Shown here piece by piece: positions 13,801 through 57,694 of a DNA stretch of 64,000 nt (positions within the stretch are counted from its first letter, which is position 1; every line of letters starts with the position of its first letter). Under the pieces are notes generated by a model. The model saw only the letters and a program-made list of their open reading frames with translations, was not told the DNA's origin and ran no database searches. Origin of the DNA: Fimbriosthenelais zetlandica (taxonomy: Eukaryota); NCBI GenBank assembly GCA_977030845.1, contig OZ365111.1, forward strand, positions 48,980,001-49,044,000, read 5' to 3'. Both the position numbers and the translations under genes were made by a program.

Positions 13801-16601
13801 TTGCGCCAATAGAGTGGAATGGTAGGTAATTGGGGTTTAGCCATGCACTTCAAGCAATATCAGTTTCATTCTGTGTAGTATATAGAGTGTTCCAGCACAT
13901 ATCAATATACAAGAGGAACTTTTAAGCTGGAGATTTGAAATAGGCCCTATTTAAACTGAGAAATGATTTTTTCCAGGAGAAACAGTACCTAAGGACTCCA
14001 CAATATATCGTGTGGAACTCCTATTTGTGTCTCAGCCTGTCTACATCATCATGTGCTGCTTCTCCTCTCTTGGAATCGTCATCGCTTTTCTCCTGTTAAT
14101 CTTCAACATCACTTACAGGAATTACAGGTTCGTGAGTATTTAGACCCAACTTTTAAGATTTTAAAGACCTGGAATTTGTAATTGGAAAATGTTTACATGG
14201 ATTTGTCACTTTTTTCAGATTGATCAAGATGTCTTCACCTGTCATGAACAACATCATATTGGTGGGCTGCATTGTCACTTACCTCACTGTCTACTCCCAG
14301 GAGCTTTTTGAAAGTGACACAGAATTATTCTGCAAAGTAAGGAACAACCCTATCTCACAGTTTGTTTCATAACAATGCTTTAACCTATATATGGTTATGA
14401 AACAGGCCCTGATCTATAGACGAAATACAGACAAAATATTTAAAATATTTTGAATGTTGAATACGTTTGGAACTGAAATATTATGTGTTATTATTCAAAC
14501 AGATAAGATCCTTGACTGTGATGATCGGATTCTCGCTTTCAGTCGGGGCTCTGTTCGCAAAAACCTGGAGGGTTTACGTGATATTCACAAACAAAACCAG
14601 AAGAGTGGTAGGTCAAAGAAATTATCAACTATTCCCGTTTCTTGCTAAAATCCACTTATGGCATACACAGCTCTATCTTTTGGAGGTGTTAGTACCTTTC
14701 TTTGTCTAATAATTTAATATTTTATCCCATTTAGATCCTAAAGGACTACAAACTTGTACTGATTGTGTTTGTCATAGTTATGCTGGATGTTATAATTTTT
14801 GTTACAAGGGAGCTCGTGTCTCCCCCGATTGTTACCAGAGAAGTGGCCTTAAAAGAGGTAGGTGACTGGGATACATGCATGCATTTACATACATACTGTC
14901 TAACGCAGTGACAGAAATTTGTGGAAGAAGATACTTGAATACAGCCTCTTCAAATAGCATTTCCTAATGCTCCCACTTCCGCTTCCTGTGCACATGCGCA
15001 CATTCTACTTCCTCTTCCCTTCCGGAACACATCCTCCACATTTTCAAATTTCTGAGATAGTGCTTCCCTTCTCAAGAACATCTCATACTACGAACTGTCC
15101 TGTTTATGCAGGCTACTTTATGTCACTCCTAAATCTAATTCTCTTACATGTATAAATGTTATTATATTACTTATATTAAAATTATTATTAACCCAAATAC
15201 CTCTCAGTATATTTTCCTTCCACAAATGTATGTAAGTATGGTACATTGTATATTCTTGTGATTGGAAAGTACTGCACTTCTTGCGGTGCAAATTCATGCT
15301 CTTAGGTCTACATATATATAATCTGAAGTATGCAGTATTGGTGACCTTCTATTTGCAGACTTACGAAGATGGTGACCTTGTTGTACAATGGGAGATCCTG
15401 GTTTGCAAAAGCGCTTATGATCTGTACTTTCAAGGTGTCATTTACTGCTACAAAGGATTGATTTTGATATTTGGAGCTTTTCTTGCCTGGCAAACGAGGA
15501 AGGTATGTATGAGGCTGACAATTTTACAACTTTAATTTTGAGGTTAATTTTTATACTGCATATGGCTTTATATTCCGTACGATATTCTATTAGTTCTCAG
15601 AGGATATCTACCCACTGTGATATGTTTTTGAATACAACCTGGCAGGTGAATATTCCGGCGTTGAATGACTCGCAGTATATCGGTATGTGCATCTATAATG
15701 TGGCTGTGCTCAGCATCCTCAGTGCTATACTCATTTTTGTGTTGGAGCACAAGCTGGAGCTGCAGTATGTACTCACCTCGGCCTTCCTTATATTTGGGAC
15801 CACCACCGTACAGCTCATCATTTTCATACCAAAGGTGAATTTATGGTAAATTAACTGTAGAGCAGATTAATGACAGATATTTAGACTTCAAGAGAGAATT
15901 TGATGCTCAAAATCAGAACACACTTTTGAGCAAAACTTAATTATGCTGCCTTGGTTACCATTTCCTAACAAGTAACATTGGTTTTCTACAAATAAACAGT
16001 TCCTCCTATGTAAAAATTATTTGCTAATGAGACCTTATTTGACATGACAAACAATTAGAATGAGCGTCCCACAGGGGCTGATGTTAGGCCCACTACTATA
16101 TCTAATTTACATGAATGACGTGCTGGCAGCAAAAGTAGGCAAATTATGTTATAAGACCCCATACTCCATCCTCGTTAACAATTGTCCTATCACTGCCCAT
16201 TTGCACAAGTAGACCAAGGCACTTTACTAGACACATATTAAGATAGATAACTGCACACAACCTTGTGCTCTGCTACTGCACACAAACGAAGCTTGGGTGC
16301 AGGTGTGCGGATCTGCTAATATTGTTCGCAGAACTCCCAGAGCACTCTAACAAATTCAGTGAATGACATGGTGACACTTTTAAGTATTTCAATTGTTATG
16401 TTTATGAAGGTGATGAAGCTGAGAGATATGAAGAACCAAGTAGAAGAGGAGTCAGAGACGGCAACCACAACGACTGATCTACCCAACAACACCTTAACAG
16501 CGGAGGAAGATGAAGAAATAAAAAAGCTAAAGAAGGAAAATGAGGAACTCAAAACAGAGCTAGCTAAACACAAGGCAGACGCTTCGAAGAATGCGGCATG
16601 A
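10887..16601 (+). CDS. GABA-B receptor-like class C GPCR, 16 exons: 10887-11114, 11429-11566, 11714-11884, 12204-12305, 12398-12463, 12706-12844, 13152-13343, 13467-13622, 13744-13821, 13977-14127, 14219-14336, 14503-14607, 14735-14857, 15359-15502, 15646-15834, 16410-16601
   Basis: Signal peptide MGVFCWRVLVILAWPLLVLG. Venus-flytrap motifs IIGLYPMSGGWP, GGGCS, LSWGCSSPALS, FFRT and AYDAVWAIAL. 7TM motifs LIKMSSPVMNNIILVG, GALFAKTWRVYVIF and TRKVNIPALNDSQYIGMCIYNV. The C-terminus is a coiled coil (IKKLKKENEELKTEL). All introns are GT-AG and in phase. Confidence 0.93.
15875..16300 (+). mobile_element. Decayed LINE reverse-transcriptase fragment (CR1/L2/Jockey-like) in the last intron of the GABA-B-like gene
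   Basis: Translates to YLDFKREFDAQNQNTLLSK (RT motif LDFSKAFD..H.ILL.KL) at 15878-15934 and SVPQGLMLGPLLYLIYMNDV (GVPQGSVLGPLLFLIYINDL) at 16063-16122, in the correct order. Confidence 0.8.
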
Positions 16602-30119: not shown

Positions 30120-32706
30120 TTAAGAAACATCATCAGAAGAAACGTACAAATTATTCTCGACTAAAATATTTAAATCTCTATTCCTTTTAATAGGTTGGCT
30201 GTATGCAATATCTTCCCTTGGAGTAGCCCACTTATCAGACTGATCATTATTGCTATCAATGTAACCTCTGTCATCTGACATATACTTAGCATTGGACCCT
30301 TGAGTTGTCCTGGTTAGACTTATATCAGGAATGTTGTTTGCCCTGTCTATGGTTGCATATCTATTTGAAGTGCTGTCCGTCTCATCCTTGTCTTCCTTTT
30401 CTCCAGTGCTTCGACAAGATCCCTCAGTGCATGGCTTTTTGATGTAACCTCTGTTGGAAAAAAATGAAAAGGTTAATAGCCTAATGTCAATCTAAAGTAG
30501 GGGGAATTTCCAATTGCACATAAAGGTCAGGACATTTGAAATCCTTGTTAAACTGAATCTGTCACCTTCGCACGATTCCCTCCCCGACCCTCCACTCGCC
30601 ACCTGTCGCACTTTCATTCACCAAGCATGCATCGAACCTTCCTGGTTGCATTTTATCGTTGACCTTACCTTTTAACTAAGAAAAGGATGACTAAGGCTAC
30701 CACCAATGCCAAAATTCCAATGACAACGCTTGCAGCAATGATACCACCTGAAATTAGACATTGTTGTAATAACATCTGGGGCCTGTTTCAAAAGGATTTT
30801 GAAACAGGCTCCTGAGGCCCATTTCAAAAGGGAAATTAGCAATGCTAAGTCTATAGCTTTTGTTTTGAAACAGGCTCCTGATTTAACTGGTATAACTTGC
30901 AGAACATAATTAGTACAAAACCGTTTCTATATGAGATTTTTACCTATGGATTTCTGACTTGCAGTTTCGGTTTGTTGCACATCCGTTTCATTTCGATCAG
31001 GGATAGTTGTCAATGTTGGTAGTTTATCATCGGTGGTGATGGTATCTGTGGTGGTTGTGGTGGTTGTGGGTATAACCATATCTACACTTTGGGTTGAAGT
31101 TGAACTCTGTAAACAGTTGTAGGCAGCACCTCCAATGTCAGCTGTCAAGTTCTTCCTTCTCCAACAATCACGATGTTCCCACGTTGAAAAATCTGCCGGA
31201 TTCTGATTTTGCTGAAAGACTAAAAACATACTGTTATCTTCATATAATCATCTAATTATCCTTACAATCCAAAGGCTAATGCTTCAGAAACAACGCGTTA
31301 TATATTAGACTGCAAAAGGGGGTTCAAATTGATTGATTTTGTTCGGTGGATTAATAAAGATACGACCAATTCAAACTCACCTTCATATCCAATCAATAAC
31401 TGTGTTTCTTCGCTTCCACTGATTAATCTTAACTCAAACTTATCATGTTGACGGTAATTCGAATCCCCCTCTAGGGTAGTTCCATCTCTCGTTTGGAACA
31501 TGCCATTTGCCACCCAAAATACCTTTAGATAAATACTGCCTTGACCTCCGTCAATAGTAATTGAACAAGCCTGATTCCCACATGAAACTTCCATCTGGTT
31601 GAACAGGTGACATGATGTAATATAACCGCATGGTTTTTCTTTAACATCAATATATTTTTCCCATACTGGAGCAGCTAGTGGACAAATGCTTTGAACTTGA
31701 TGCCCTAGAAACATTGAAACCAACAAGATTTTGAATGGCTTATTTTTGCTCATTTTTGCTTTGAAAGCGACACAAGGATTCTCATAATCCTAGTTCAGTC
31801 GGGTAGGGTATCTTACCAGCATTCAATTTTACTTATTGATCCAAACAGAATAAATTATTTTCTTACTTTCTATGCAACGATGTGAGTTCAAGAAGTCTGC
31901 TTTCTGCCGACCCTCTAACTGTACATTGGACCAATGTAGAATTTGGCGGTTTTTTCCGACATAGTTGTATATCAGAGAGACGAAGGGAACCCCTGTACCT
32001 TCACCGGAAGTTGATGGAGCAAGAACTTGATCATCAGGACAAGCTAAGTTAAAGGCATCATCGGGATCATTTTGAAAGCCTGCATGCAAGGATTTAGGAA
32101 AACATATACCGATATATACCGATAACAAGAGGTATAGACTGTCGACTGAAACAGTGACATCGAAAACAATAGGAGCCTGGACCTTCTCTTGCTTTGAATG
32201 GAAAGATGGTGCCAAACGCTCTGGACCTATAATTTTGTCACAAAAGGTATAGTTCTTCCCATTTTGCGGATCACCCGTGGACTGTTAATACCATGATTTC
32301 AATATAGGTGGCCCTTCGATCATTACGTGTCGAAATTTCCGGATATATCTTAACAGTTTTGTCTGATAGGCATGCAATTCGTTTCTTTTAAAATTATTAA
32401 CATTTATCATATAACATACTTATGGTTGTTTATAATTTTAATCTCTATGAATAAATCGCATAAATTGCCTTGAATTTGAGTTGGTCCCATATGCTATATC
32501 AGAGAACGAACATAGTATGTAATTTAAAGTGTTGTCCTCTTTGTGCAGGGTCAACATTTTCGGAAAGTCAGTTTCAGGAATGAACAAAATGTAGTTCTAT
32601 ATAATATCAAATACTTACACACACTGCTGCAGTGTATCTCAGTCGAGAGAAGGAACAATGCTGCCAATGAGAGGAGAATGCATGTATTCCTTGTTGATCT
32701 GCTCAT
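30120..32706 (-). CDS. Orphan type I receptor, tandem paralog A. Exons: 32619-32706 (signal peptide), 31867-32079, 31381-31704 (CUB-like), 30944-31219 (Thr-rich stalk), 30669-30747 (TM), 30120-30450 (tail)
   Basis: MSRSTRNTCILLSLAALFLLSTE; CPDDQVLAP...RCI; CSITIDGGQG...LLIGYEG; TM GIIAASVVIGILALVVALVILFLV; tail with RYATI, IAYSQP and LVENNLY. All splice junctions are in phase. Confidence 0.85.
30778..30878. repeat. Small hairpin MITE family (TIR GGGGCCTGTTTCAAAA...TTTTGAAACAGGC(C/T)CC), two adjacent copies here
   Basis: Related copies occur at ~2057-2200, ~14360-14410, ~37765-37860, ~47548-47715, ~49953-50030 and ~52045-52093. Confidence 0.75.
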
Positions 32707-33621
32707 GACTATATCACTAATCCTTGCACTTCATTGAAAACATTAAATTATATTGAAATTATTCTTACTTTTGTCGTTTTTATTCCTTCGTTCACGCACT
32801 AAATCACAAGAATATCACAACTCCGACCGGGAAAACCCAGGACCTTACACCAAACTGAACGGTAGACCTATATTGTGTCATGAATGATGTACACGTTTAA
32901 GAATTTTCTACCTGGAACACCTTTAGTCGTGCACTGCCTCAAATTCCCTAAACTATCACTTGGCATGCAGGAAACAAAAGCAAGCTCTTAATTATTCTAT
33001 GAACAAAAAATCGATTATTTTAATGATCAATGCCAGCAAAGTCATTTTAAACAATTCAAAAAATATATAATGAATATAGTAGCAATCATTTACAATGATC
33101 TTCCCACTATATGGCCTATTTCCAAATCTTTTTTCACATGGTATTATCCAAGACTGATCTGTCCTGTCCATTTTCACATAAAACAGAAATAATTTATCAT
33201 AATATGTACAGCAAGAATTCACACAAATGAAATACCTTCAAGGACAATAGGAGATATTGAACAGGCATGACGTCATTATACATGTTAAATGAAGACCTTT
33301 TTGGAGACCGTTTATAAGGCCAGATCCTTTTGAGGATAAATAGACAAAATTTACCGAGGGTGTGGCAAAATATTCGGGCCTCTCCACCCCTGTGGTTCTT
33401 TTTATATTCGTTTCACCTCTAATAAATAATTTAAAATCACATTTACTAGACTGCAAAATATTGCTCGCAGGCAATATACACTATAGACCAAGGTCAATAT
33501 TTCTATCATATTTCTGCCTTGACATAGTCTAATGATGCATTCTACTCCAACAAAATGATTTCATCACGAAGGGCACATGTTACGTTACGGGACAGATTAT
33601 TCAAACTATTAATGGTCCTTG

Positions 33622-36600
33622 TTATACTTCCACCGAGCCTGGCCTTTCAATATGCTCTTTAAGTGAACCTTCTACAGAGTCCATTTCGTGATCGTCTGAC
33701 ACTTCGGAGTCTGACATTGAGTCTGACATTGAGTCTGACCCTGACAGTTCCATATCATCCATTAAAGAGTCTGGCAATTCCATATCATCTTCAAAAGTAC
33801 CTGACATTTCCTTATCTTCATCTACAGTGTCCAGTCTTCCGACGCTCCCGTTACTGTATGCTCCATTAATATGTTTATTGTATTTGAAACCTGTAGGTTT
33901 AATGATGTGTTTTAAGTCATCCATTTTGATTGCAGTAACTCCTTCCTGAGTGGCAGGCTCACTTGATATATCTGACTCTGCATCAGTTTCTTTACCCTTA
34001 CACTCACAACATCTCTCAACGCAACAGTTTTCGATGTAGCCTCTGAAGAAAGAAATTCATCCGAAATTATAAGCAAATATTTATGAAACGGCTCTTTGAA
34101 CATCAAAAAGATCTTTAGGAAAGGGAAATATATTATTAATATTCGTTTTGAAAGAGGCTCATTGAATTATATAAAAAATAACTAGGCATTGCTGGCCTTT
34201 ATATATTCAATATTTGACGCAATATTAATTGGAAATTTACCTTTTAACGAGGAATATTACTATCAACAGGATTGATAGAATTCCAATGGTGAGAGCTGCA
34301 GCTAGGATGCTCGTTGCTGAAATGGGAATCAACAATCATTATGTTGCCTCTTAATTTACTTCCCTTATTACTTACCTCCTAATTTACTTCCCTATAATAC
34401 TAATGTATCGCTTTGTGATATTCATATTAGTTATATTAGCATTATGGGTAAACTTATAATGTGAGTAACTACAGCATTCTGTACTTCAACACAAATTACT
34501 AGGATTATGGATTACGTGGATCCAGGATATTTCAGGGGACGTTGCTACAGAAAAGGGCACAGTTGTATTTAAATACTGAATAAAATTATCCAAAATTAAT
34601 CATTTACTTCCTGCTCCTTTGCTTGAGGATTCCGGACTGGCTGTTGTCTTGCGTTCTCTGGGAGTACCTGAAGACCTGCCGTCTCCATCATTTGCTAGGC
34701 TTGTCTGTTTAGCTGGAGTTGTGCTTGATGAACACTGATAAGCAGCACTTCCCAGGTCACTATATTTTCTTTTTCTTTCCCAACAGTATCTGTAGTCCCA
34801 CTCCTCGATTTTAATTGCACCTGTGCCTATTTGAAAAACTGAAGAAATAGCAAATATAATTATGTATTGGGTAAGAAATTATGTAACTAGTACGGTACAG
34901 GGTATTGTACAAGTGTTGACAGCCCCAAAACGGGAGTGTTGGCAGCATTCTGATTTCACTGCATGACCAAATATATGCTCACCTTCATATCCTAACAACA
35001 AATGGGCCTTCCCGTGGTCTGAAGCGAAATATATTGTCATTTCTTCGTGGGCACTGAAATCATCAGTTATATTGAGTGTTTTGTTTGAATGATGACCGTC
35101 ATTAACTATCAAATTGCCATCTTTAGCCCAAATGACATGGATGTAAACTGCCATCCCAAAACCTGCGTCAAGAGTTACAGAGCAGGCTGATCCAGCACAA
35201 CTGAAATCTTGTGATTCTAGTTGACATGCTCCGATATAACCACATGGTTGGCGATCTACACGAAGGCGTCCAAATGTAGGATGATCTCCAGGGCAAAGCA
35301 TATGTACTTGTTTTTCTGGAAGGTTATCAATAAAACAAAATTTAGTATAAAGGTCATGTTACCTTTGCTTCAAAGGATCCCACGTTTCAAATTCGAAGGA
35401 ATTTACATATGAATGGAAATCCATGGAATTTCATGTCGAAAAAACTAATTAACCTACATGGCCCTTGACCATGACCGAGGCCATTGTATTTTGATTCTAA
35501 AACCTGAGGCCCTCGGCCAATAATGTATATCGTCCTTTGTATTGTTGCTCTAGTACTATGTATACAGTTGTGAATTTTTATAGTTTGGTGTTCTCGTATA
35601 TACTTTACCTAATCAATGTTCGTGTCATATGTAATGTATTTCACTTACTTTTAATGCAACGATATAAGCTGGCGAAGTCATCTGTTGTTATATCATCATA
35701 TATTTTGTTCTTATGGATAACATTATCTTGCAGTCCTAAATGATCATATATCAATTCAGGGGGAAGTTTAATCTGGGATTCTATCTCAGTTGGTGCGAGA
35801 ACTTCGTCGCTTGGACATTTCAACATCAGCTGTTCTCCATCTAAATCCCCTGCAGGTTGATCTATCCTCTCCCAGCCTGTAGTAAAGTCAGAAGTTGGAA
35901 GTGATTCTTAGCTATAAAGATTAACTATAAACGCTTATAAATTAGCTATAAATTTCCAACAATTCCAATTGAACTCAATTATAGAACTGGCAGAATTACT
36001 TTATTTTCTTTGTTCTTACTATTCAGCACCTTTGTATTAATAGAACATTAAAAAGAAAACAGATCCTGAAAATAACACGACTCTTTGGCTGGCAGAAATA
36101 TCATGGTACTCCTACCTTTGAGCAGGCACATTGGTATAATTAATTGTAAGACCTGCAATTCAACATTTTTAGCTGAATTGTCAAAGAGATGACACCTTAT
36201 TATGGTTTACCATGCAGGGCATGCCCTTTCAAACTCCACCCTTGTTGCACCATAAATTATTATATTATACATGTGTACACCTAAAGTAAGCGTTTACACC
36301 GGTATCCTGAATATAGTCACCAAAGCCCTCACGATTATATAGTGCTCGTGTCATTGTTCAAGTGGGATATGCACATGGTACTTGCATATATTTTGGAAAG
36401 TAAAGGATAGATTATAAATGGATACAGGTTTATCTTCAATCTGGTAGATGTATACCAATTAAATAGACACATAAATATCATGTAATCGCCATGTAATTGA
36501 CTCAATTTTTAAACGAATTTTAGGAAGGAATTCAGATAATACTACACATGTATAATGTTTTAAGTGAATATTTGTTTATACTTACATGCAGGGGTGGCAT

Positions 36601-36667
36601 CCACAACTGTTGCCATGATAAAAATCATAATGATTATCACCTCCATAATGATGCTGGTACGTACCAT
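33622..36667 (-). CDS. Orphan type I receptor, tandem paralog B. Exons: 36586-36667, 35649-35876, 34983-35315, 34608-34838, 34241-34316, 33622-34042
   Basis: MVRTSIIMEVIIIMIFIMATVVDA; CPSDEVLAP...RCI; CSVTLDAGFG...IYFASD...LLLGYEG; YCWERK...LGSAAYQC; TM SILAAALTIGILSILLIVIFLV; juxtamembrane CCVERCCEC; acidic Ser/Asp/Met-rich tail. Confidence 0.85.
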
Positions 36668-36753
36668 CTCCAAAGTCCTAATTTTCTATTTTCAGCCGAG
36701 TGGTTTTGTCAATATATAATGAGAGAGTGGGGAACGTTTGGGGTGTCTATCCA

Positions 36754-36763
36754 CTTTATATAG
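36754..36763 (-). promoter_or_regulatory. Candidate TATA box of receptor paralog B
   Basis: CTATATAAAG on the minus strand lies ~90 bp upstream of the ATG at 36667. A TGACGTCA lies further upstream at ~36971. Confidence 0.45.
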
Positions 36764-38503
36764 GGACTTCATGGGACCAAGTCCTTTAGTCGGCACGGTC
36801 TAAAGCCCATATGGGTCATTTGTATGGATGATAGGAATATAAGAAATGTTCATATCCAGCATGAATATCTTTTACATACTTACATGTTATTTTTGAGTCG
36901 TGGGGTAAATGTCAAATGATTGGTATCCTCTGTAATAAAGCCATTGAATTTAAATGTGAAAAGTTGAAAATGACGTCATTGCTCATGATCAGCTTAAAAA
37001 GTTGAGGTCAAATGGCTTGTCCGTGAAATTGCTGGGGAGCATACAAAAAGCACGATTTTCGGGGGACTGTTTACTTGTATATTATACAATGAGATTCTGT
37101 TTTTACATGACTGCAAGTCTGATTCAGTGGGTTGGCTCTAATTGTTATTGTAGCTCTCTGAGGGCCTTTATTCCCATTACACTATTATACTGTGGTGACA
37201 TATTTTCATCAGGCTGTTCATTCATCCCACACAGAAGTAAAGGAGTACATGTATGGGTGACTTTATATATACTGACTACATCGAGCACTGGCCAGGTCAA
37301 AATGCCGTCACGCTGAATCATTATCGTTAAACCAAACCTGTCATTACTTCCTGTTTGGCACGATTTTCTATCCCGGAACACCAATAATGTTTTAAAATTT
37401 ACTGACGTTGTTCTTCCTCTTTAAATAAAGGAATTTTAAGTGATTAAGATTTAAAGAATTTAGTTCAGAACAGAAATTTCTTTTGTGTTGGGACATCAAG
37501 CATTTAGCTTTCCCCGCTGTCACAGTTGACAGGGCCGCAATTAAGCAATTGACAAAAGGACAGCTTTTCAAATCAATTAAAATCTTTATTGGCATAAGGT
37601 AAATAAATCATTTCTGAAATATAATTATTACGCGGTACCATATATTTGTCCTAACTAAATTATAAATACTTCCTTTTATAACTATATAATGACTAATGAG
37701 ATTCTAATATCCTCTTTGACCTTCTTCCTGTAGGACCCACCTATATAACGTGCTAGCTTTGACTTCGGGGCTATTTCTATTCATATAGGGTACTGTTTCA
37801 AATGTATTTCTAGGAATGCTAAACATATATGGCTATATTTTCGTTTTGAAACAGGCCCCGGGAGTTGTGAAGGCAAGTTGAACACAATGTAACGTTAGTA
37901 ATTATCATCTCCTCCTAGAACAAGTCCTAACTTATTTAGGTCACCTTCTAGGCCCTAACACCTCATTGTAAGGCAATTGTAAGATCTGCCAGATCCAAAA
38001 TCGTATGCGACACCAAGAAAAAAATGTTTGCACAACACCTGTCATGAGGCGGTGTCCGTGTTGTCCTTTTTTAAAATAACTGGGGGTCAGGAGGGTGCAG
38101 AAGAAAAAAGAAACAAAAAATGTTCAGCTAGATAATAACAATGCAGCCACCTGCAGGCGAATTGGAACTACTTAATGACCTAGATATACAAATTGTTGTC
38201 GAGTTACTTTTTGAGTTACTTTTTGAAGATTGTTGTACAACGGTGCCACCCTTTTATACTGACTGAACGGTATGTTTGTAATTTTATATATTCCTAGACA
38301 CGGAAAACCCATTCATTTTAACATTGACTACAAACTGGCTACACATAAAGCGTATAATTATATATAAATACTGCTTCACTACTTAAATACTGCCCACTTC
38401 ATATTAAGAAACCAAAAAAAATGGAGCTGGGCCCCTTTCCAGAGGAATCAGGATGTGTTGCACAATGACTATAGGAACTTTATGAAAAGTTTAGCTAACT
38501 TTG

Positions 38504-41500
38504 TCATGTCCTTGGAGGTGGTGGGGGTACCTCTTCATATTCCCCATACAATTCATTATCAACTAATGACAGCTCATTATCAAGAACCTTATGTGACGTT
38601 TTCCTTGTTTTATCAACCATGGCGTATTCCACGTCAGCGTTGTCCTCCTGCCCTTCACTTCTCATGCTGTCACGCCATGAAGGGATGTGATTGTCTTTAC
38701 TGATGACACTGTGTCTAATGCCGTCATCAATTGTGACAGGATGATCTCCATTGGCTTCACTTGACAATGGATTGTTATAGTAAATGTTAGATGGTTGTTG
38801 ATGATTGTAATATGTTGCAGTGTTTTTGGATGATCCGCTGTTATAGTAAGTATTCTCTTCTGCTTTTGATTTGACTGAAGAAGGTAAGTGATAAGAGTAA
38901 GGTACATCTCTTCTCAGATCAGCATCATTCTCACTCGCAGCATTAGAGTAATGGTCCTCGTCTTCTATCGATCTCCCATATTTCTTGGTTTTGCCCTTAT
39001 CTCTCCGAGATTTCCTTTAAAATAAAATTTAAAAAATCAGAATCTCTCTCCTATGTTGTTTTACATAATATGCTAAATAAATGTCAACTCGAGTGGAAAA
39101 CAAAAAAAGAAGAAGGTTCATCCTATCTATGAAGACTGGTCAGATTACCTTGAGAAATGGATGCAGGCTCCTATGAGGAATATTGCAGCAATGATGAACA
39201 GGCCACCTAGGACACCACCAATGATGTAAAACCGATCTGCAATGATTTATGGCACGTTGGTTTGCGTTATATAAGAACTATGCAATTAACACATAATGGA
39301 CAAGACAGCATCTTCAATCCACGCCCTTCTATTAATACGTAAGTGATCTGGAGCTTGCTTCAAAACAACGATTAAGTCTATGGCATTTTTGTCCGCTGAA
39401 ACAGGCCCCGGAAATCCTATAATAATAAAAAAATCTGGAGAACTGGAATTTTGGTAATATCTCGAGTAAGGAGGTAAGATGTTGAAACATATACTAATCA
39501 GTCTACTAATAACTGACCAATTAAGTAATGTGGGTACTATCCTAAATACCCTACAAATATGTCCCACCATTATTCCCCAAACCAATTATATATCAGCTTA
39601 TAGGCTGTATACCTCACAGGCCTACATCAAGCAGGTCATCTATCTACATTTAGTAGGCCTATCTATAAATTATCTTCTGAATTAGCCGGCTGGGGCCTGT
39701 TTCAGAATGATTACTAGTTAAGTCTAACAAATTACATAGTTTCATTGTGTAAGCTTTGCTCCAAAAGCCCAAATTCATCTCTTTTATGAAAATTAATTTA
39801 ATTTAAAATGTAATTTAAAACAGACTCTGATCGTAGCGATTTTTCCTGAAAATTGGTGCAGTATGGATCGATATACAGGAGGCTAGGGTATACGATTATA
39901 TTTTAATCAAATTGGTCAAAGGATTCCATAAGTAATTACCATTTAAACCAAGCTTAACTTCTGAAGCAGTAGTTGAAGGCGACATCTCAGTGGAGCCTGT
40001 TGATTCAGGAAATGTTGCTGCAGGAATTACAGTGCTGGTAGATGAACCAGAAGGTACTAGTACTGTGGTTGTTGATACAGATGTGGTTGACGACTGTTGA
40101 GTTGTGCGCGGATGACCTGTCATACTTGTCCGTCTTATTGTACTACCAGCAGGCGGTTGTGTAGCAAATGGATTTGTAGTTGTTATAGATAGACCCCTTG
40201 TACTTTGGGATTGTCTCTTCCTACGGGAATGTTTTCTATTGACTGCATTTGACCGAGTACCGAGATTCATTGCGTTCCTTGATTGGCATTCTTTATCCAG
40301 CCAATTTTCAATTATGGGCAGAACAGCAGTTGATGAATAAACTGGAAAAGTAAAATATGCCACAAAACTTTTTGAAGATCATATTTTAATGTCAACCGAA
40401 TTGCTATGATGAATTTCAAGAGGCATTCAGCTAGGCTTCTGTTTTTAGGGCTGCGATGACTTTTGGGGATTGGCATGCATTTTTAGTAGTAATTATATTA
40501 TTAATTATAATTATTGTTAATTAATTATATCTTCTTACTTTCATATCGAATGATAAACTGGAGTTCCCGGCTCACGGGAGGATACATAATGGTGACATTT
40601 TGATGAAACTTCTGAGGAAAACTTGAGATGATTTGATGTTCATCGTCTCTTCCCTCTTTAGAGTTGGCATGGAAAATAAGCATTTGGGTGTAAATGATGC
40701 TGGCTGGTCCCCCATCTATCGTCATTCTACAGGGTCCAGAGGGACAAGGTGCACTTGCCAAGGACTTATTATTACAGGGGAGTATATAACCAGACGTTGG
40801 TTTACTAAAATAAAGATGACTTGTTGGTGTTTCTGTGCTAGGGCAATACCGGAAGAGCTGATGTTCTAAGAGAGAAAGAGATGTATAGCATATTAATAAG
40901 ATAGGTACAAAGAAAGCAATGAACCCTATAACCTACACATAGGATGAGCCGAAAAGATATTTGAATATCATATTATAAAAGAGTATTCAGGTGTGTATGG
41001 ACAACAATACATTCCCTATAGTAGACGAGTCTGATAGCCCAATACATTCCCTATAGTAGACGAGTCCGATAGCCCAATACATTAATTCCCTATAGTAGAC
41101 GTGTCTGATAGCCCAATACTTCCCCTATAATAGACGAGTCTGGTATAACAATAAATTCCCAATACATTCCCTATAATATAGTAGACGAGTCTGATATATC
41201 AATAATTTCTCAGATGGCCGATGAAAGATCTTGGTGCATGTAAGGCAACCAATGTCAAAAAGCATGATGCATGTAATGAATTAAAAAATAGCCATGAGCT
41301 GAAGCTCTGTCATCTTGCTGTCAACACATATGATCTGAGAATTTGAACTCACTTTGAATACATTGATGAACGTTGATGAAGGTCTGCAGGGTGATATTGC
41401 CAGGAATGTTATCTTGGTAGATTATCACCTTGTTCTTGCCAATATAGTCCTGGAGTAAATAAGGACGTGTGCCAGAGCTAGATCTACATATTAAAGGTGC

Positions 41501-42448
41501 CAAAACCCAGGACGGCGGACAAAATACTGTATAAACTCCTCTCTCCAACTCCTGCAAATCTGAAAATAAGATACGTAATGTTAATACATCTACTGAATGT
41601 TGTGTCCATCAGAGATATATATGCCCATAATATTAGTCACATCAAGAAGGGCGTTGTCAAATTGAAGGCCATACATGCAGTAGTTAAACAAAATAATTGC
41701 CATTCATGCATTCTTGTTATTTATCTATATTATAGTTAGACTCTGTATGATTATTAGACGCTGTATGATTAATAGACTGTATGATTAATAGATTCTGTAT
41801 GATTAATAGACTGGCTATAATTAATTAAACTCAAGTGCAAAGGTAGGCTTTGATTGCAGATCTTATTGGCTATTATATGACAGACAAAAATACTTTATCC
41901 CAATCCACAGGCAGAAAGCATGACGGGCCCATTTCAGAAGAAAGATGCCGTATACATTTATTAAAATATACAGACTTATACCACTGATCAATGTAGCGCT
42001 TCTATATTATGAAACAACCCCTATTGGGGAACGTTTATAATCATTCCGAGGACACTGTACTATGCCCTATATTTACCCACTGAAATGTTGAATATTGTTC
42101 TATATATGGGACAATTATAAATGTGGTATTTCAAGGGGGATAAAAAACAAATAGGCAAGTAGGTGTGAAGTGAGGGAGGGTAAATCCCTGTAAAAAAAAA
42201 ACACAGTAAGAAGGAAAGAAAAAGGTGCAAAACAATGAATGGAATGACCACAGGTGTGTATATATTATAGGGGAGGTTTTGTGTGTTATATCCTCCTTGA
42301 AAGAAGATCGAATAAAGGTAAGGTACTTACATACGGATCCGGTGTTGGATCCAGGTAGGAGCATAATCATGACTATGGATACGAATAACGCATAATTATT
42401 GTGAAATGTTCTTATTGTTTTCACAGTATGCACGAGAAGTGTATCCAT
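38504..42448 (-). CDS. Orphan type I receptor, tandem paralog C (more divergent). Exons: 42331-42448, 41353-41559, 40539-40865, 39940-40341, 39149-39236, 38504-39014
   Basis: Hydrophobic leader ALFVSIVMIMLLPG; CPPSWVLAP...QCI; CRMTIDGG...FIIRYE; RRKR plus a long S/T stalk; TM FYIIGGVLGGLFIIAAIFLIGAC; Tyr-rich tail ending VEYAMV...VDNELYGEYEEVPPPPPRT. Confidence 0.83.
41006..41195. repeat. Minisatellite, ~35-bp unit x ~5, intronic
   Basis: AATACATTCCCTATAGTAGACGAGTCTGATAGCCC is repeated head-to-tail with indels. Confidence 0.9.
41738..41822. repeat. Short tandem repeat, ~16-18-bp unit x ~5, intronic
   Basis: (T)AGACTCTGTATGATTA(A)T variants occur in tandem. Confidence 0.8.
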
Positions 42449-43878
42449 GCTGATTCAGTTTTATAGTATGTGTATGGCCCTCATGGTGTCAAAAAGGCTA
42501 GAGGGGTGACGAAGGTAGGTCTACGGTCTGATTGGGAACTGGGTCAGCACAACCGACCGTAACAAAAGAAACAAAAAGACGGAATTGACACAGAATTAAA
42601 GACGAATCGTGACCTGACTGAGTTAAAAATAAACTGAATATCTCCGTCTGTAAGATCATGAGAAATATGCCATTAGACACAATTACAACCATACTTAATC
42701 ACTAATTAATCTTTAATTGATATCTTAATCAATTTATCCGAGAGAAATTGAGGAAAATTATAGGTACTATCTGACAAAAGGAATGTATATACTTCTAATC
42801 AACACCTTTGGGACTTTTGATATTCATGCCTCAACATAACGTTAGCAATGCACTAGTACTAAAGTACGTATTGGGGCGTCTATGGATAATATTCGTTTTG
42901 AAACTGGCTCCAGACCAACGTGGCACCTGGTGACTTGAACCTGAGAAGGGGGTGGATTTTATTCACATGTACACATACTACTATAACTGCCATGATTGTG
43001 GTGTCTTGTTGATGGTTTATTGTCAGCAATGAAATGCACCACTCCAATATGCTAATTATGCCCGTTTTTAAAATCAAGACGGTCATTGAACCTTACAAGC
43101 AATGATACACATTGTGGCCTTTGACACTAATGAAGTATTCATTAATAGCTTACATTACTGCCCTGTCGTACTAACACTATGTACATGTTTAATGACTCTA
43201 CTCTGCCTTATTAATGATTTCTGACTCATCACTAGGCATCACTAGGCATCACTAGGAGGTAATTATCAATAATGATTTTCCCCCTTTTGTTTATTAAAGA
43301 AAAAAATGTCTAAACCAACACAAAACCAAAAATTTATTAAACATTTATCGCTTCTATAGTTTAAAGATGCATCTTTAATAAATTTTGCTGCTTAACAATT
43401 ATGTAAATCTGTTACGCATGTTAAGCATCATCCTTGACTATAAATCATACATGTACATGACGTCATATCAGAAACATCCACTATCCAACATCAACCTTTT
43501 TTTCTAACTTTTGTCTGTATCTATATCGACTGCCCAACTTTTTCTGTCTATCGGTCGTCTCAGCATACCTTCTCAACCTATCAATTAAGCGCTCCCCCCG
43601 CATCCACCCCCCACCCCCATTATAGTCTTCTTGGGTAATTATTTTTTTCATAATTATGCCCCAATTGAAAACAATGACTTCCATTTGGAGGAAGTATCAA
43701 AACTTTCATGTTACGATATGCGAACTTCAGCCACCGATAAAGTTCATTGTTAACAAGCATCACCGTTGTTGCAACAATTGCAAAAGGGTGGTAGTGTCGC
43801 AAGCAAAATCTCAGCAGCGGAGCCCCTGCTTTTTGAAGTCCAACTTATGTCAAACCCGCCAACAAACAAATTAAAAGT

Positions 43879-49500: not shown

Positions 49501-52500
49501 AACATGAGTAGCACATGAGAATTATATGGAACACGAATGCAACTATAGTGTTTCAACACTTATGGCTGTAACAGACTGCAAACGCAGGCCTCTGGTTGCT
49601 TGTGTTTCGGTTGTTAATGTCATGCAACTTGCCAACTATGCTTTGGACTATGGTTGTACAATGGCCTGTATAAAATGTCGTATGTGTCAAGAGCACGAGT
49701 GAAAAACGCTTTGGTCTGTTCAAGCCATTATATTGTAGCTTATATTATAAAAACCGACTTTATTCAGCGCTACAAGTCTCGGGGTTATAAGTTGATATCA
49801 TCGATGTCTGCAGCATCCAATGTGACAGGAATTCTAGTCAAGACTGACCGAATTACAGAGGCTGTCCACAAGATGGGTGGTCTGGCCTTCTGGGATTATG
49901 CCTGTGCAGGTCAGTTTCCATATAATATTGTATGATACTTGATAGATACCAGGGGCCTATTTCAATAGAAATATTAGCCATATGTAGACTTGCTAATTAA
50001 TTAATATTCCTTTTGAAACAGGCTCCAGGGTGTCATTGTACAAATGCTTGATACATCTATACATATGGTACTTGATACATATAGATCGTACGTTGAAATT
50101 TGAATTCCAGAAATCATTAATCCAAATGTCAAAACTATTTCAAAATGAATTCATGTTGTTTCTAGGACCTTACATCCCTATAGATATGAACCCAAACCCG
50201 AAAGCGTGAGTGGATGAGTTGATATGATATGAACTGCACAATCATTTAACAATTCTTATGAATGCTGAATGCTCTTTTTATTGATTTCCATGGGGAATGA
50301 CCTACTTAAACCTGTTTATAGAAGAATATTAGCCATATATATACTTACCATTGGCTTTGCTTTCATTCGTTTAAAAATGGTTAAATGCAGCATTATAGGC
50401 TTTTCAGTGTATCACAATGCTAACTGCCTGTGTGATGACACCTGTTGAGTTATTCTAAATACACTTATCATCGACATAGCCACCAACGTTTGATTGACTT
50501 TAGTTTCAGGACAAATTGCACATAATCTTTGCCTTATTCGTGGAAATTCAGATACCTAACTGACTGAGAACTCTGTGTGCAGTCCAGGGGCTCCAGATAT
50601 ATCATGCCTAACTCACATTTGTATTGTTGGTTTGGAGTTGTGCTGAGCTATTTCTGATCGTTTTTTTAATAAAATTACAAATAAACACGAATATAGATCT
50701 TAATTTCGGTCCGGCATATTTAGTCTCTCGTTATATGTTGAGTGAAACTTAAAAGGAGGGAAGTGTACTCCTACTTCCGGTTCAATTGACCTAGTTTCAG
50801 TCTCATTGTTTTAGGCGCCTATTATGGAGCAACCGGCAAAATCATAGTGTCTTTTTGTTTTAGTTCCACTGCAATATTTGCAATCCGAAATGTCCGTCTT
50901 TATATGTTTTCATATGAACAATGAAAAGAACAATTCACAACTGCAAATCACTTTCAGAGGTGTTGTTGATTCATTTGTTATAAAAAAAATTTTTCTTATA
51001 GAGCCAAGGATGCTATATTTTTATCCACACATAAGTTCCTGGGAGGCGTAGGGACCCCTGGTAGGTAGTCTTGAAACTAATGTCATGTCTATATGATTAG
51101 ATAATATATTTAAACAAAAATAAAGTAAACTGGATGAGTTTATCAATGAATGTGTGCTAGATTCCTGGTTAACTTGCTTGATAATCTTTTTAAGGACTAC
51201 TTATTGCAAAACGAGAATTGTTTCAAAATGAGGTGCCAGGAGCTGTAGGCGGAGGAACGGTTGCTTTTGTAAGTAATTCGTTTTAATCTAAAGGAATTTT
51301 AATCTAAAAGAGTCTTGCCCTTTCATTGCCATAGCTTGTAAAAAGTAGGCCCAAGATATGTTATCTCATACCTCATTTTCCCTGTTTAGGTTACGAAGAA
51401 GACTGAGAGTTACCTGCATAAGACTGAAGAGCGAGAAGAGGGTGGAACCCCGGCAATTGTCGAATCGATAAGAGCTGGACTAACTTTCCAATTGAAGGAG
51501 GTATATGTTGTATCTTATTGATGCACTCTGGCCAGTGTTTGCCTGTATTATCGCTCATTTTTTACACCATAACAACTGCACTGCGAAGGCCGCAGTCCAG
51601 TTTGAATGTGATAAAACTCCTTATGTCATGACCTCCCGAGTTGATAGGATAAAATGCGTTGGGCCCGGCCTGGAAGGTATGCTATTCCTAGCCTCAGGAC
51701 TCTTGGCACAGGTAGGCTGAGCCACGAGTTTGGAAGGAAATCATTGAAGCGCGACTGACTTTGATTGGGGTGATTGGATGTCGAGGCAATCATAGTGGAT
51801 TAGACTCGGACTTGAGTGTTTCCCTACTGTTTTTAGAGCGGAAGGTGGATAGTGTCGTGTATCATAGGGGGTCAACACACTCGAGCTTTTCTCTTAGTTC
51901 TCATGTGTTAACCCCTAATTGAACCATAAACAGGCAATTAGGGACGTCTGGCGCATGCGCTATATCACAAGATGGCCGCTATTCCTATGGCTCAGCTTTA
52001 TGTCTCTCTTAGCCTATTGCATATATTTAAGCGCCATATTTGAACAGGTTTCATAACCATAGGCTAATAAAGCATTGTTATGAAACAAGCCCCTGGTGTC
52101 AGTCTACAAGTAGCATTGTATTGTATTAAGCCATGTCGGACAATTGCATGTAGAAATGTATCGGACTCTGTGTCTAATCCTCAATACCAATTATCCCAAT
52201 ACCATTTGTTCATTAATCTAATAAATCTACTTCTACTAATGTACTTACCGGCCTTTTCAGACAATAGGTGCTGAATGGATAGAAGAACAAGAACAGAAAC
52301 TTACACAGTAAGACATTATCATTGTTCAGACTGAGAATGAAATTACCATTTTCGTCAACTCTATACTGGTTGCCATGTTATTAAAACCCTGCAGACAATA
52401 TTTCTTATCGAGCGATTCTTCTTCTCTAAAAACATATTCTGTTTTAGGAAAGCCTTTGAACGTTGGAAACATTGCAACAACTTGTTCATTCTGGGAGGCC

Positions 52501-55293: not shown

Positions 55294-57694
55294 CTAGATA
55301 AATTCAAGCGTGACTTCATCGGGAATGTTGTGTTTAGCCTTATGATCATTGAAGAGATCAGACAGCTCCTTGACGTACAGGCTGTGGTAGTAATCTATTT
55401 GTTCCTGAGTCGGTTCCTTCTCTTGAATGATATCAATGGGTCTGCCAACTGAAAGATACAAAGAAAACTTAGCTGTAGCCACCGACAATTACTAAAATCT
55501 CTAATTACTAAAAGGAATATTTACTGATATTCTGTTGCACGCAAATCGTGCAGAATTCAGTCAGAATAGTGGATATTCTTTCTCAATATTATACACTTGC
55601 AGATCCCTCCCTATATTTCTCCATTGCCAGGCGGTCTCTATCTATTGAAGAGTCTGGGGAGAAAGGTTTTGGAGGACTCTTGACCGAGCATGGCCAAACT
55701 TGGCGACGCTTGACCAAGCTTGTCGCGCCCGGTGTGTCTGGGCCTTAAGGCTGTAGGCTTAATGCCTCCAAGTATACAGGAAAGACATTGGAAAGGACTC
55801 GCCGTTCTCGAATAATGATATTGATGTAACACTTACCAACTGTATGAATTGGCTTGCGATGAGGAACAAGGCCAAATGAATAGTTAAATACACCTCGTCC
55901 ATAGAAGAGGGGAAGAGTGAAGCCGCTGATGGACTTGAGCTTCTGTTGGAAAAGGCGAACAAATGAACCCTGGGGATTATCTGCCTGCTCGAAGATGTCA
56001 TTCTCTCCAAAACTGAAACATGGCACCAGACCCGCTCTGTGTGAAAAAAACAATGAACAAGAAAGAATGCATAAAGAAGACTATGGAAAAAAGATAAAGA
56101 TAATGGAGACACTTTTGTTTGTCATTTTAAAGCACAAATATAGCTTACGCCAATATGATAATAAGTAGGCCTACACGTTATCTATTTTATCTAATGCATA
56201 GTACTCTCGAGATAGAGTCTATCTCACTATGTGATAATGATAACCTACTCATTCTGATAGAGCAAAAACAAAGTTGACACTTTGGAACTGTTTACCGATG
56301 AATTTGCGGAGGGAACTACATAATGATGTTATAAATAAATTTTTAGCAATATTAAGTCTATGACTAGCATCAATTTTGAAATTGATGTATGATCGGTCTC
56401 CAATATGGACAGATGGGAATCGGTATATATTCCACGATGGAGCTAAAAGCCATTATTGGAGGAATACCAGTTTCTACATCATGTTTTCTATTTAAACAGG
56501 CTCTAAATGTGTGGATATACTATATATGGAACATATAATGATATACCCTGTGCGGATTGCCAGCTTGACGAAGCCTTTCCTATTCTTTAATGTAAGTTGA
56601 TAATTTCCAGGTCGCGCATTGAGCGCCTCCTGAGCTCCTCCTATGACAATAATGGCGGCGTTTCCGGTCCCTTGTTTTGTCATCAAGTGTTCAATGCTAG
56701 GGCGACTTACATCACAACATCCTGAAGAAATGTAGCATATCATTTAGAATCCCTTGTTTTTTTCTATAATTGGGTCTGCATAAGATATATATTATATTGA
56801 CAAAATGAGTAAAGGGGCAGGTCCCCACTAAGTAATAATGTTTCATGGGGAATAGGAGCCCCTTTAATTGACAATACTGCCGCATATGCAATAGGAGAAT
56901 GGCTTTTGTCCATATGAGTTAACTGATATATTCAGACTAAAATGAGAATTTCCTGAGAAATAGCATGGGGAATTAGAATGCGAGGGACAAAATAGCTCCA
57001 TGAAGCAAGAAAGGAAGCCACTATAATTATACCAGCTGAGCCGAGATACACCAAGGGCTGATTTCAAAAACAAAATTTACAACATTTACAAAGTTAGAGT
57101 GGATTAATATCCATAATTCTTCCAGATTCAATAAACTCATATATCGAGAATAATTTCTATTTAAAAAATAATTAATGCAACTATGATAAAATACTTACCC
57201 ATCCACAGAACATAACCACGAATAATTGGCCACATAAAATTAACACTCAATGTTAATACATAAGGTGTGATTCCTGGAAACTTGGAGCTAAATCCAGTGG
57301 CCTCGGAGCCAAAGTTACCAAACAGACTACAACTCAACACTCCATGTGGGTGAGTCCCGATAATGTAGTTCTTCCCAGGGTCAAGATCGTTGGTTTTCTC
57401 AAGACTTAAAGGGAAATAATCAGCGAAGTATTTCATGTGGATGCCCTTCCTCAACCATTTGGACCTCCGACCACCTTTGGAGGATGTTTTCAAGACGTAG
57501 ACATCATAATAAAACCATATCAAGTATCCAACAACCATCCACCAGTAACTGGTGAAGAACAGGACAATGGCAGTGATGGAAAATAAGAAGGGGAAGACGA
57601 GGAAAGAGTTGACATAGTAGAGAACGCTCAACATCTGCAGCCTTCTTTCTAATGGCATAGAAAGCGGCACAAACTGTATCCCCATGAACTCCAT
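55294..57694 (-). CDS. DGAT2/MOGAT family acyltransferase. Exons: 57199-57694, 56547-56721, 55837-56036, 55294-55448
   Basis: PLERRLQ, YFADYFP, GTHPHG (HPHG catalytic motif), [29 protein letters not shown] and GRPI...[13 protein letters not shown]. Confidence 0.93.

What the first reader, a model, noticed from the sequence alone, without database searches (positions are those of the whole stretch)
30120..42448. Tandem cluster of three orphan single-pass receptors with a shared six-exon architecture (candidate undescribed receptor family)
Seen: three minus-strand genes share the same exon order and intron phases (1,1,1,1,2): signal peptide, Cys-containing N-domain, CUB-like domain, conserved motif plus S/T stalk, TM, and cytoplasmic tail. 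They share the motifs CP.(D/S).VLAP, RCI/QCI, PC(G/N), C(S/R)(I/V/M)T(I/L)D(G/A)G and (L/I)(G/R)YE, but overall identity looks low. I cannot assign them to a named family. Inference: this is an old, rapidly diverging lineage-specific cell-surface recognition family, for example immune, allorecognition or gamete recognition.
Basis: partly seen in the sequence, partly recalled or inferred. Interest (0 to 1): 0.85.

Follow-up and report, generated by a model that had tools for sequence, protein, structure and literature searches.

The report
Three tandem orphan lectin-like surface receptors
Three neighbouring genes in this animal genome encode related cell-surface proteins with no detectable sequence relatives, whose first outer domain is predicted to fold like a sea-urchin-type sugar-binding lectin, so they look like a very diverged branch of a lectin-type receptor group rather than a wholly new kind of protein; their function and expression remain untested.

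Summary
Three intact minus-strand genes (A 30120-32706, B 33622-36667, C 38504-42448) each have six GT-AG exons with intron phases 1,1,1,1,2. Their first three introns fall in identical alignment columns. They encode type I membrane proteins of 436, 456 and 550 aa: signal peptide, two Cys-containing ectodomain exons, a small Cys motif plus S/T-rich stalk, one TM helix and an unrelated tail. They are true but old paralogues (23-32% identity, blastp E 8e-50 to 2e-18, no DNA similarity).

By sequence they are orphans. Pfam, PDB sequences, an exhaustive HMMER scan of 1.84 billion representatives, two word-index searches and a metagenome scan gave no real hit. However, a moderate AlphaFold model of the exon-2 domain (pLDDT 67.6) is matched first by SUEL/rhamnose-binding lectin domains in five structure libraries, each match weak alone. 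Scan notes report many SUEL-CUB-TM-Tyr-tail receptors elsewhere in this genome.

My best reading is a strongly diverged, disulfide-depleted offshoot of SUEL-type single-pass receptors. The "CUB-like" label for exon 3 is unproven. No RNA data could be obtained. Immune, allorecognition or gamete roles are pure speculation. Gene A's last exon probably starts at 30450.

The parts
32619..32706 (-). Gene A exon 1: start codon and signal peptide, phase-1 donor GTAAGT
31867..32079 (-). Gene A exon 2: N-domain (CPDDQVLAP ... RCI), predicted SUEL-lectin-like fold
31381..31704 (-). Gene A exon 3: five-Cys domain ending LLIGYE (claimed CUB-like, unproven)
30944..31219 (-). Gene A exon 4: W..R.CW.RK...G.AAY.C motif, then Thr-rich stalk
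30669..30747 (-). Gene A exon 5: TM helix, phase-2 donor after LVK(R)
30120..30450 (-). Gene A exon 6: cytoplasmic tail of 110 aa with 6 Tyr. A second in-frame candidate acceptor at 30267 shares the same 13-nt context ACAGAGGTTACAT
36586..36667 (-). Gene B exon 1: signal peptide
35649..35876 (-). Gene B exon 2: N-domain (CPSDEVLAP ... RCI)
34983..35315 (-). Gene B exon 3: five-Cys domain ending LLLGYE
34608..34838 (-). Gene B exon 4: Cys motif plus short S/T stalk
34241..34316 (-). Gene B exon 5: TM helix
33622..34042 (-). Gene B exon 6: 140-aa acidic, Ser-rich tail with a juxtamembrane CC..CC.C cluster, ending VEV
42331..42448 (-). Gene C exon 1: signal peptide with a long n-region
41353..41559 (-). 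Gene C exon 2: N-domain (CPPSWVLAP ... QCI)
40539..40865 (-). Gene C exon 3: four-Cys domain ending FIIRYE
39940..40341 (-). Gene C exon 4: degenerate Cys motif, RRKR dibasic site, 88-aa S/T/P stalk
39149..39236 (-). Gene C exon 5: TM helix
38504..39014 (-). Gene C exon 6: 170-aa tail with 13 Tyr (three YYN, VEYAMV, YEEV) and C-terminal PPPPPR

Best explanation
The locus holds three old tandem paralogues. Each encodes a type I membrane glycoprotein made of a cleavable signal peptide, a disulfide-poor domain with a SUEL/rhamnose-binding-lectin-like fold (exon 2), a second Cys-stabilised and probably beta-rich domain (exon 3 plus the start of exon 4), an O-glycosylated mucin-like stalk, one TM helix, and a tail that differs completely between copies.

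I read them as a strongly diverged offshoot of the single-pass SUEL-type (SUEL-CUB) receptor group that is reported to be expanded in this genome.

Inferred mechanism: the membrane-distal two-domain head, held out on the stalk, binds an extracellular protein or glycan ligand. Each paralogue then couples that binding to a different intracellular output:
- C through phosphotyrosine docking: YxN, YEEV and ITIM-like VEYAMV motifs plus a PxxPxR SH3 site.
- B through a palmitoylatable Cys cluster, acidic Ser clusters and a C-terminal hydrophobic-x-hydrophobic PDZ-type end.
- A through YxxPhi-type motifs.

Shown here: gene structure, paralogy, topology features, lack of sequence relatives, and the fold prediction for exon 2. 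Inferred: ligand binding, glycosylation, signalling, and kinship with the SUEL-CUB receptors.
For: Gene models and phases.

Paralogy.

Topology: an N-terminal hydrophobic segment and a single strong TM segment in each protein, stalks with 39-53% S/T/P, and sequons in the ectodomain.

Cysteines: the ectodomains hold even Cys counts (10, 10, 8). Gene C has lost both the Cys at the exon 1/2 junction and the PCGY Cys, which suggests those two form a pair linking exons 2 and 3.

Fold of exon 2: the model has pLDDT 67.6 and pTM 0.54. SUEL-type lectin domains lead in every library:
- Foldseek PDB: ranks 1-3 are SUL-I and latrophilin Lec.
- Independent VIA wide search of 48,161 chains: 7 of the top 9 are SUEL/RBL-type domains, counting P113 and the rice beta-galactosidase C-terminal domain, which I class as SUEL-like from my own knowledge rather than from the tool output.
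- AFDB clusters: 8 of 30 rows are named SUEL-type lectin and one rhamnose-binding lectin.
- ESM Atlas: a SUEL_Lectin cluster at TM 0.56.
- Swiss-Prot models: SUEL itself at rank 1, then LAT-2, EVA1C, SML and eva-1.

Context: scan notes describe many SUEL-CUB-(sushi-like)-TM-Tyr-tail genes in this genome, one cluster followed up.

Tail motifs were read directly from the translations.
Against: - Pfam finds neither SUEL_Lectin nor CUB, even at E<=10.
- The canonical 8-Cys pattern and the YGR/DPC/KYL motifs of SUEL domains are absent by direct reading.
- The exon-3 model is unusable (pLDDT 40.7). The language-model hint of CUB for gene A (0.86, below the 0.9 lead threshold) was not reproduced with gene C.
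- No sequence link to any SUEL-CUB protein was shown. The exon-3 profile hit none in 1.84e9 representatives.
- No expression data could be obtained.
Confidence: 0.5

Rival explanations
1. This is a genuinely new, lineage-restricted receptor family unrelated to SUEL or CUB receptors. On this view the SUEL-like prediction is a convergent small alpha/beta fold or an AlphaFold artefact from a three-sequence alignment.
For: There are no sequence relatives anywhere. All fold matches are weak. SUEL signature residues and most SUEL cysteines are missing.
Against: The same lectin family tops five differently built structure libraries, which chance does not explain. The domain order and one-domain-per-phase-1-exon layout match the SUEL-CUB-TM receptors noted elsewhere in this genome.
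Confidence: 0.27
2. The proteins are mucin-like adhesion or protective surface glycoproteins without a signalling role, and the tail motifs are chance matches in disordered sequence.
For: The stalks are S/T-rich. The tails are unconserved between paralogues, at 17-24% identity in forced alignment. Short linear motifs arise easily by chance.
Against: Gene C's tail has 13 Tyr in 170 aa, with a thrice-repeated YYN, and YEEV directly followed by PPPPPR. B carries a five-Cys juxtamembrane cluster. The stalks are short (31-88 aa) compared with true mucins.
Confidence: 0.15
3. One or more of the three are unexpressed relics or mis-modelled ORF chains rather than working genes.
For: No RNA evidence could be obtained. 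The genes are absent from the protein collection. Only 915 bp separate B's stop from A's start.
Against: All 18 exons are open with canonical splice sites and conserved phases. Cysteines and motifs are conserved despite saturated DNA divergence, which requires long-term purifying selection.
Confidence: 0.06

Closest known systems
SUEL-type / rhamnose-binding lectin domain (Pfam PF02140; e.g. sea-urchin SUEL and SUL-I, fish CSL3, latrophilin Lec domain)
   Same: The predicted beta-beta-beta-alpha-beta-alpha-beta fold of the exon-2 domain aligns over the whole Lec domain. This family ranks first in five libraries. It starts with an L.CP..V(L/I) strand and ends with a Cys.
   Different: There is no Pfam match. 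The domain is about 70 aa rather than about 95 aa, has two internal Cys instead of eight, and lacks the YGR/DPC/KYL sugar-binding signatures. Carbohydrate binding is therefore doubtful.
EVA-1 / EVA1C (single-pass receptors with SUEL-type lectin domains)
   Same: Both are type I membrane proteins with a SUEL-type domain at the N-terminus, one TM helix and a cytoplasmic tail. They appear among the fold matches.
   Different: EVA-1 proteins have two canonical SUEL domains and no second beta-rich domain or mucin stalk. No sequence similarity was detected.
SUEL-CUB-(sushi-like)-TM-Tyr-tail receptors reported elsewhere in this genome and in a brachiopod and an annelid (scan notes s1-214044, s1-183025, s1-204010 and others)
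   Same: The module order is the same: signal peptide, lectin-like domain, about 110-aa second domain, small Cys module, TM, Tyr-containing tail. Both have compact six- or seven-exon genes and tandem clustering.
   Different: Those genes are said to have recognisable SUEL and CUB domains. The trio has neither by Pfam, and its exon-3 profile does not reach any such protein. I could not compare sequences directly.
CDCP1 and other CUB-domain single-pass receptors that dock Src-family kinases
   Same: This is an analogy of logic only: a diverged beta-sandwich ectodomain plus a tail with Src-SH2-type Tyr motifs (gene C has YEEV followed by PPPPPR).
   Different: No homology was shown, and the CUB nature of exon 3 is unproven.

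Membership tests
SUEL-type lectin domain (PF02140) | Match to the Pfam profile above the gathering score | tested here: not met
   hmmscan of the exon-2 ORFs of A, B and C at E<=10 gave no SUEL_Lectin hit. The PDB sequence profile search was also negative.
SUEL-type lectin domain (PF02140) | Alpha/beta SUEL (RBL) fold | tested here: inconclusive
SUEL-type lectin domain (PF02140) | Eight conserved Cys (four disulfides) and YGR / DPC / KYL motifs | tested here: not met
   Alignment A2 shows only two invariant Cys (CP..., (R/Q)CI) and none of the motifs. This is by direct reading; the motif definitions come from my own knowledge.
CUB domain (PF00431) | Match to a Pfam CUB profile | tested here: not met
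   There was no CUB hit for the exon-3 ORFs at E<=10. No CUB chain appeared in PDB sequence searches.
CUB domain (PF00431) | Ten-stranded beta-sandwich fold with C1-C2 / C3-C4 disulfide spacing | tested here: inconclusive
   The exon-3 model is unusable at pLDDT 40.7. In its Foldseek list, CUB domains sit among generic jelly rolls at TM about 0.2. The Atlas feature hint was 0.86 for A and absent for C. The five Cys crowd into the first 40 residues, unlike CUB spacing.
SUEL-CUB single-pass receptor group of this genome | Detectable sequence homology to canonical members | not testable with these tools
The exon-3 profile found no such protein in 1.84e9 representatives.
SUEL-CUB single-pass receptor group of this genome | Module order: signal peptide, lectin-like domain, second domain, small Cys module, TM, Tyr tail, with one module per phase-1 exon | tested here: met
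   The description of the group comes from scan notes only.
Paired activating/inhibitory immune receptors | An inhibitory member with an ITIM tail plus an activating member with a short tail and a charged TM residue | tested here: not met
   Only C has one ITIM-like VEYAMV. No TM helix carries a charged residue, and all tails are long at 110-170 aa.

The most novel reading that the evidence does not exclude
The trio represents a previously undescribed receptor family. In it, an ancestral SUEL lectin domain has shed its disulfides and sugar-binding residues to become a protein-recognition module. The three paralogues feed one kind of extracellular recognition into three different intracellular pathways, serving self/non-self or gamete recognition in a poorly sampled animal lineage.
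Probability: 0.1. Interest if true: 0.7.

Novelty: new variant of a known kind. Interest (0 to 1): 0.35.

Why it matters
If the reading holds, these genes show how far a SUEL-lectin/CUB-type receptor module can drift: out of reach of every sequence method while probably keeping its fold. They would add three unannotated surface receptors with clearly different signalling tails to an animal whose receptor repertoire is largely uncharted. That is useful for annotation and for studying receptor-family evolution. Without expression, ligand or orthologue data, it does not open a major question.

Tried and rejected
- Pfam on all large exons at E<=10 gave nothing relevant.
- The exhaustive HMMER profile search with exon 3 gave one hit, P0001. 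It is a flavin monooxygenase with a 13-fold assembly-artefact repeat, so spurious.
- Word-index searches with the exon-3 and exon-2 alignments at E<=10 found nothing.
- PDB sequence searches gave only chance hits.
- The metagenome contig scan found none.
- AlphaFold on exon 3 alone failed with pLDDT 40.7. Fold searches on that model gave generic beta-sandwiches only.
- Atlas feature searches gave a weak CUB lead for A exon 3, nothing for A exon 2 and nothing for C exon 3.
- Two sequencing-run look-ups (kinds rna and any) listed none, so read laying was never used.
- Two literature searches for SUEL plus CUB transmembrane proteins found no description of such a receptor family.
- As a calibrator I used the neighbouring GPCR. 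It is not on record. Its only relative is 39% identical and lies on ENA contig L001, which holds no homologue of the trio.
- I rejected the paired-receptor reading because there is no charged TM residue and no short tail.
- I rejected recent duplication or gene conversion because the loci share no DNA similarity.
- The spliced proteins could not be submitted to the search and folding tools. They have no reference, and I did not type them.
Full report
**Anatomy**

The region lies in AT-rich animal DNA of about 37% GC. Reading the minus strand and joining exons at canonical GT-AG sites gives three complete coding sequences:
- Gene A: 32706-32619, 32079-31867, 31704-31381, 31219-30944, 30747-30669, 30450-30120.
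- Gene B: 36667-36586, 35876-35649, 35315-34983, 34838-34608, 34316-34241, 34042-33622.
- Gene C: 42448-42331, 41559-41353, 40865-40539, 40341-39940, 39236-39149, 39014-38504.

Intron phases are 1,1,1,1,2 in each gene. In a protein alignment, introns 1-3 fall in identical columns, and introns 4 and 5 bracket the TM helix.

For gene A, the last exon is better started at 30450 than at the weaker in-frame acceptor at 30267. The upstream site has a long pyrimidine tract and encodes RGYIKKPC, matching B's RGYIENCC. tblastn with B also detects this stretch. Both sites share the 13-nt context ACAGAGGTTACAT, so alternative use is conceivable but untested.

**Paralogy**

blastp gives A-B 32% identity over 297 aa (E 8e-50), A-C 27% (E 4e-20) and B-C 24% (E 2e-18). 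One exception is PC(G/N), which in gene C is not the homologous position.

The three loci share no nucleotide similarity, even in exons, so the duplications are old and there has been no recent gene conversion. tblastn finds no further copy in the 64-kb window.

**Protein features**

- Each protein has an N-terminal hydrophobic signal-type segment and one strong TM segment.
- The ectodomains hold 10, 10 and 8 cysteines.
- Gene C lacks both the Cys created at the exon 1/2 junction and the Cys of PCGY. I read this co-loss as evidence that these two form a disulfide tying the exon-2 and exon-3 parts together (inference).
- Exon 4 starts with a shared W..R.CW.RK...G.AAY.C motif, degenerate in C. 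It continues as a stalk with 39-53% S/T/P. In C the stalk is preceded by an RRKR dibasic site.
- The tails are unrelated to each other:
  - A is 110 aa with six Tyr, including YATI.
  - B is 140 aa with a juxtamembrane CC..CC.C cluster, acidic DSMS repeats and a C-terminal VEV.
  - C is 170 aa with 13 Tyr. It has three YYN repeats, YSN, an ITIM-like VEYAMV, and YEEV followed directly by PPPPPR.
- The motif assignments (Grb2-type YxN, Src-type YEEI/V, PxxPxR, ITIM, class II PDZ ligand, palmitoylation cluster) rest on established consensus definitions and are inference, not tests.

**Sequence searches**

- Pfam finds no domain in any large exon, even at E<=10.
- A three-sequence profile of exon 3 was scanned by HMMER against 1.84 billion representative proteins. 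It returned one hit, a monooxygenase with an artefactual 13-fold repeat, which is spurious.
- Word-index searches with the exon-3 and exon-2 alignments, PDB sequence searches and a metagenome scan were all empty.

This absence must be read with care. The collection does not contain this genome. The only relative of a neighbouring rhodopsin-type GPCR is 39% identical and sits on an ENA contig with no homologue of the trio. A 107-aa profile would also miss relatives as distant as A is from C.

**Structure**

Only contiguous window sequence could be folded.
- Exon 3 alone gave an unusable model with pLDDT 40.7.
- Exon 2 alone gave a moderate model with pLDDT 67.6, pTM 0.54 and a beta-beta-beta-alpha-beta-alpha-beta layout.

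Searches with the exon-2 model pointed to the same family each time:
- Foldseek against PDB put sea-urchin SUL-I and latrophilin Lec domains at ranks 1-3, with more further down.
- The independent VIA wide search of 48,161 chains placed SUEL/RBL-type domains at 7 of the top 9 places. This counts P. falciparum P113 and the rice beta-galactosidase C-terminal domain, which I know as SUEL-like.
- Among 30 AFDB cluster rows, eight are named SUEL-type lectin and one rhamnose-binding lectin. One further row is a CUB-domain protein fragment aligned through residues 29-122 of its 176 aa.
- The ESM Atlas gave a SUEL_Lectin cluster at TM 0.56.
- Swiss-Prot models gave SUEL itself first, then LAT-2, EVA1C, SML and eva-1.

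For exon 3, the CUB idea rests on three weak points:
- A sub-threshold language-model lead for gene A (0.86), which was not reproduced for gene C.
- CUB domains scattered among generic jelly rolls in a search with a bad model.
- The end motif GYE and the ITIDGG stretch, which loosely recall CUB (my reading).

It remains open.

**Context from the scan**

Notes on other pieces of this genome describe many SUEL-CUB-(sushi-like)-TM-Tyr-tail genes. One followed-up cluster is said to be conserved in a brachiopod and an annelid. I could not see those sequences. This was a lead that I tested only through the fold of exon 2. The module order and the one-module-per-phase-1-exon design of the trio match that description.

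**Verdict**

These are old, diverged, sequence-orphan cell-surface proteins. They are more likely a drifted branch of SUEL-type single-pass receptors than a categorically new family.
- Nothing bears on immune, allorecognition or gamete roles.
- No expression data could be obtained, because no runs were listed.

**Neighbours (for orientation)**

- A class C GPCR fragment at about 15.5 kb.
- A DGAT2-type acyltransferase at 55.7-57.7 kb.
- A rhodopsin-type GPCR at 59.3-60.4 kb.

Noticed in passing
window 30775-30815, 30865-30881, 39347-39412, 39689-39705, 42898-42914, 49949-50029 and others: A short dispersed repeat with core TTGAAACAGGCCCCAGA occurs 14 times in the window (0.11 expected). Copies often sit as close inverted pairs, which is MITE- or SINE-like. 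Several copies lie in introns of the three genes, one directly upstream of gene A exon 5.
   Followed up: partly
window 30267 and 30450 (minus strand): Gene A has two in-frame candidate 3' splice sites for its last exon, both in the identical 13-nt context ACAGAGGTTACAT and both followed by RGYI. Using the downstream one would delete 61 aa of the tail, including the YATI motif.
   Followed up: partly
window 40180-40200 (gene C exon 4, approximate): An RRKR dibasic, furin-type site lies between the globular ectodomain and the mucin stalk of gene C only. It suggests possible shedding of the head.
   Followed up: no
window 32707-33621: Only 915 bp separate the stop codon of gene B from the start codon of gene A. 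This leaves little room for B's 3' UTR plus A's promoter. The first AATAAA after B's stop is 838 nt downstream.
   Followed up: no
window 55745-57694 (-), 59264-60400 (+), 15505-15849 (+): Neighbouring genes by Pfam are a DGAT2-type diacylglycerol acyltransferase (two exons seen), an intronless rhodopsin-family GPCR of 378 aa, and a class C (7tm_3) GPCR exon.
   Followed up: partly
P0001 (database protein, not in the window): This is a 1559-aa flavin monooxygenase entry containing 13 identical copies of a 46-aa segment, evidently an assembly or annotation artefact. It produced the only, spurious hit of the exhaustive search.
   Followed up: yes
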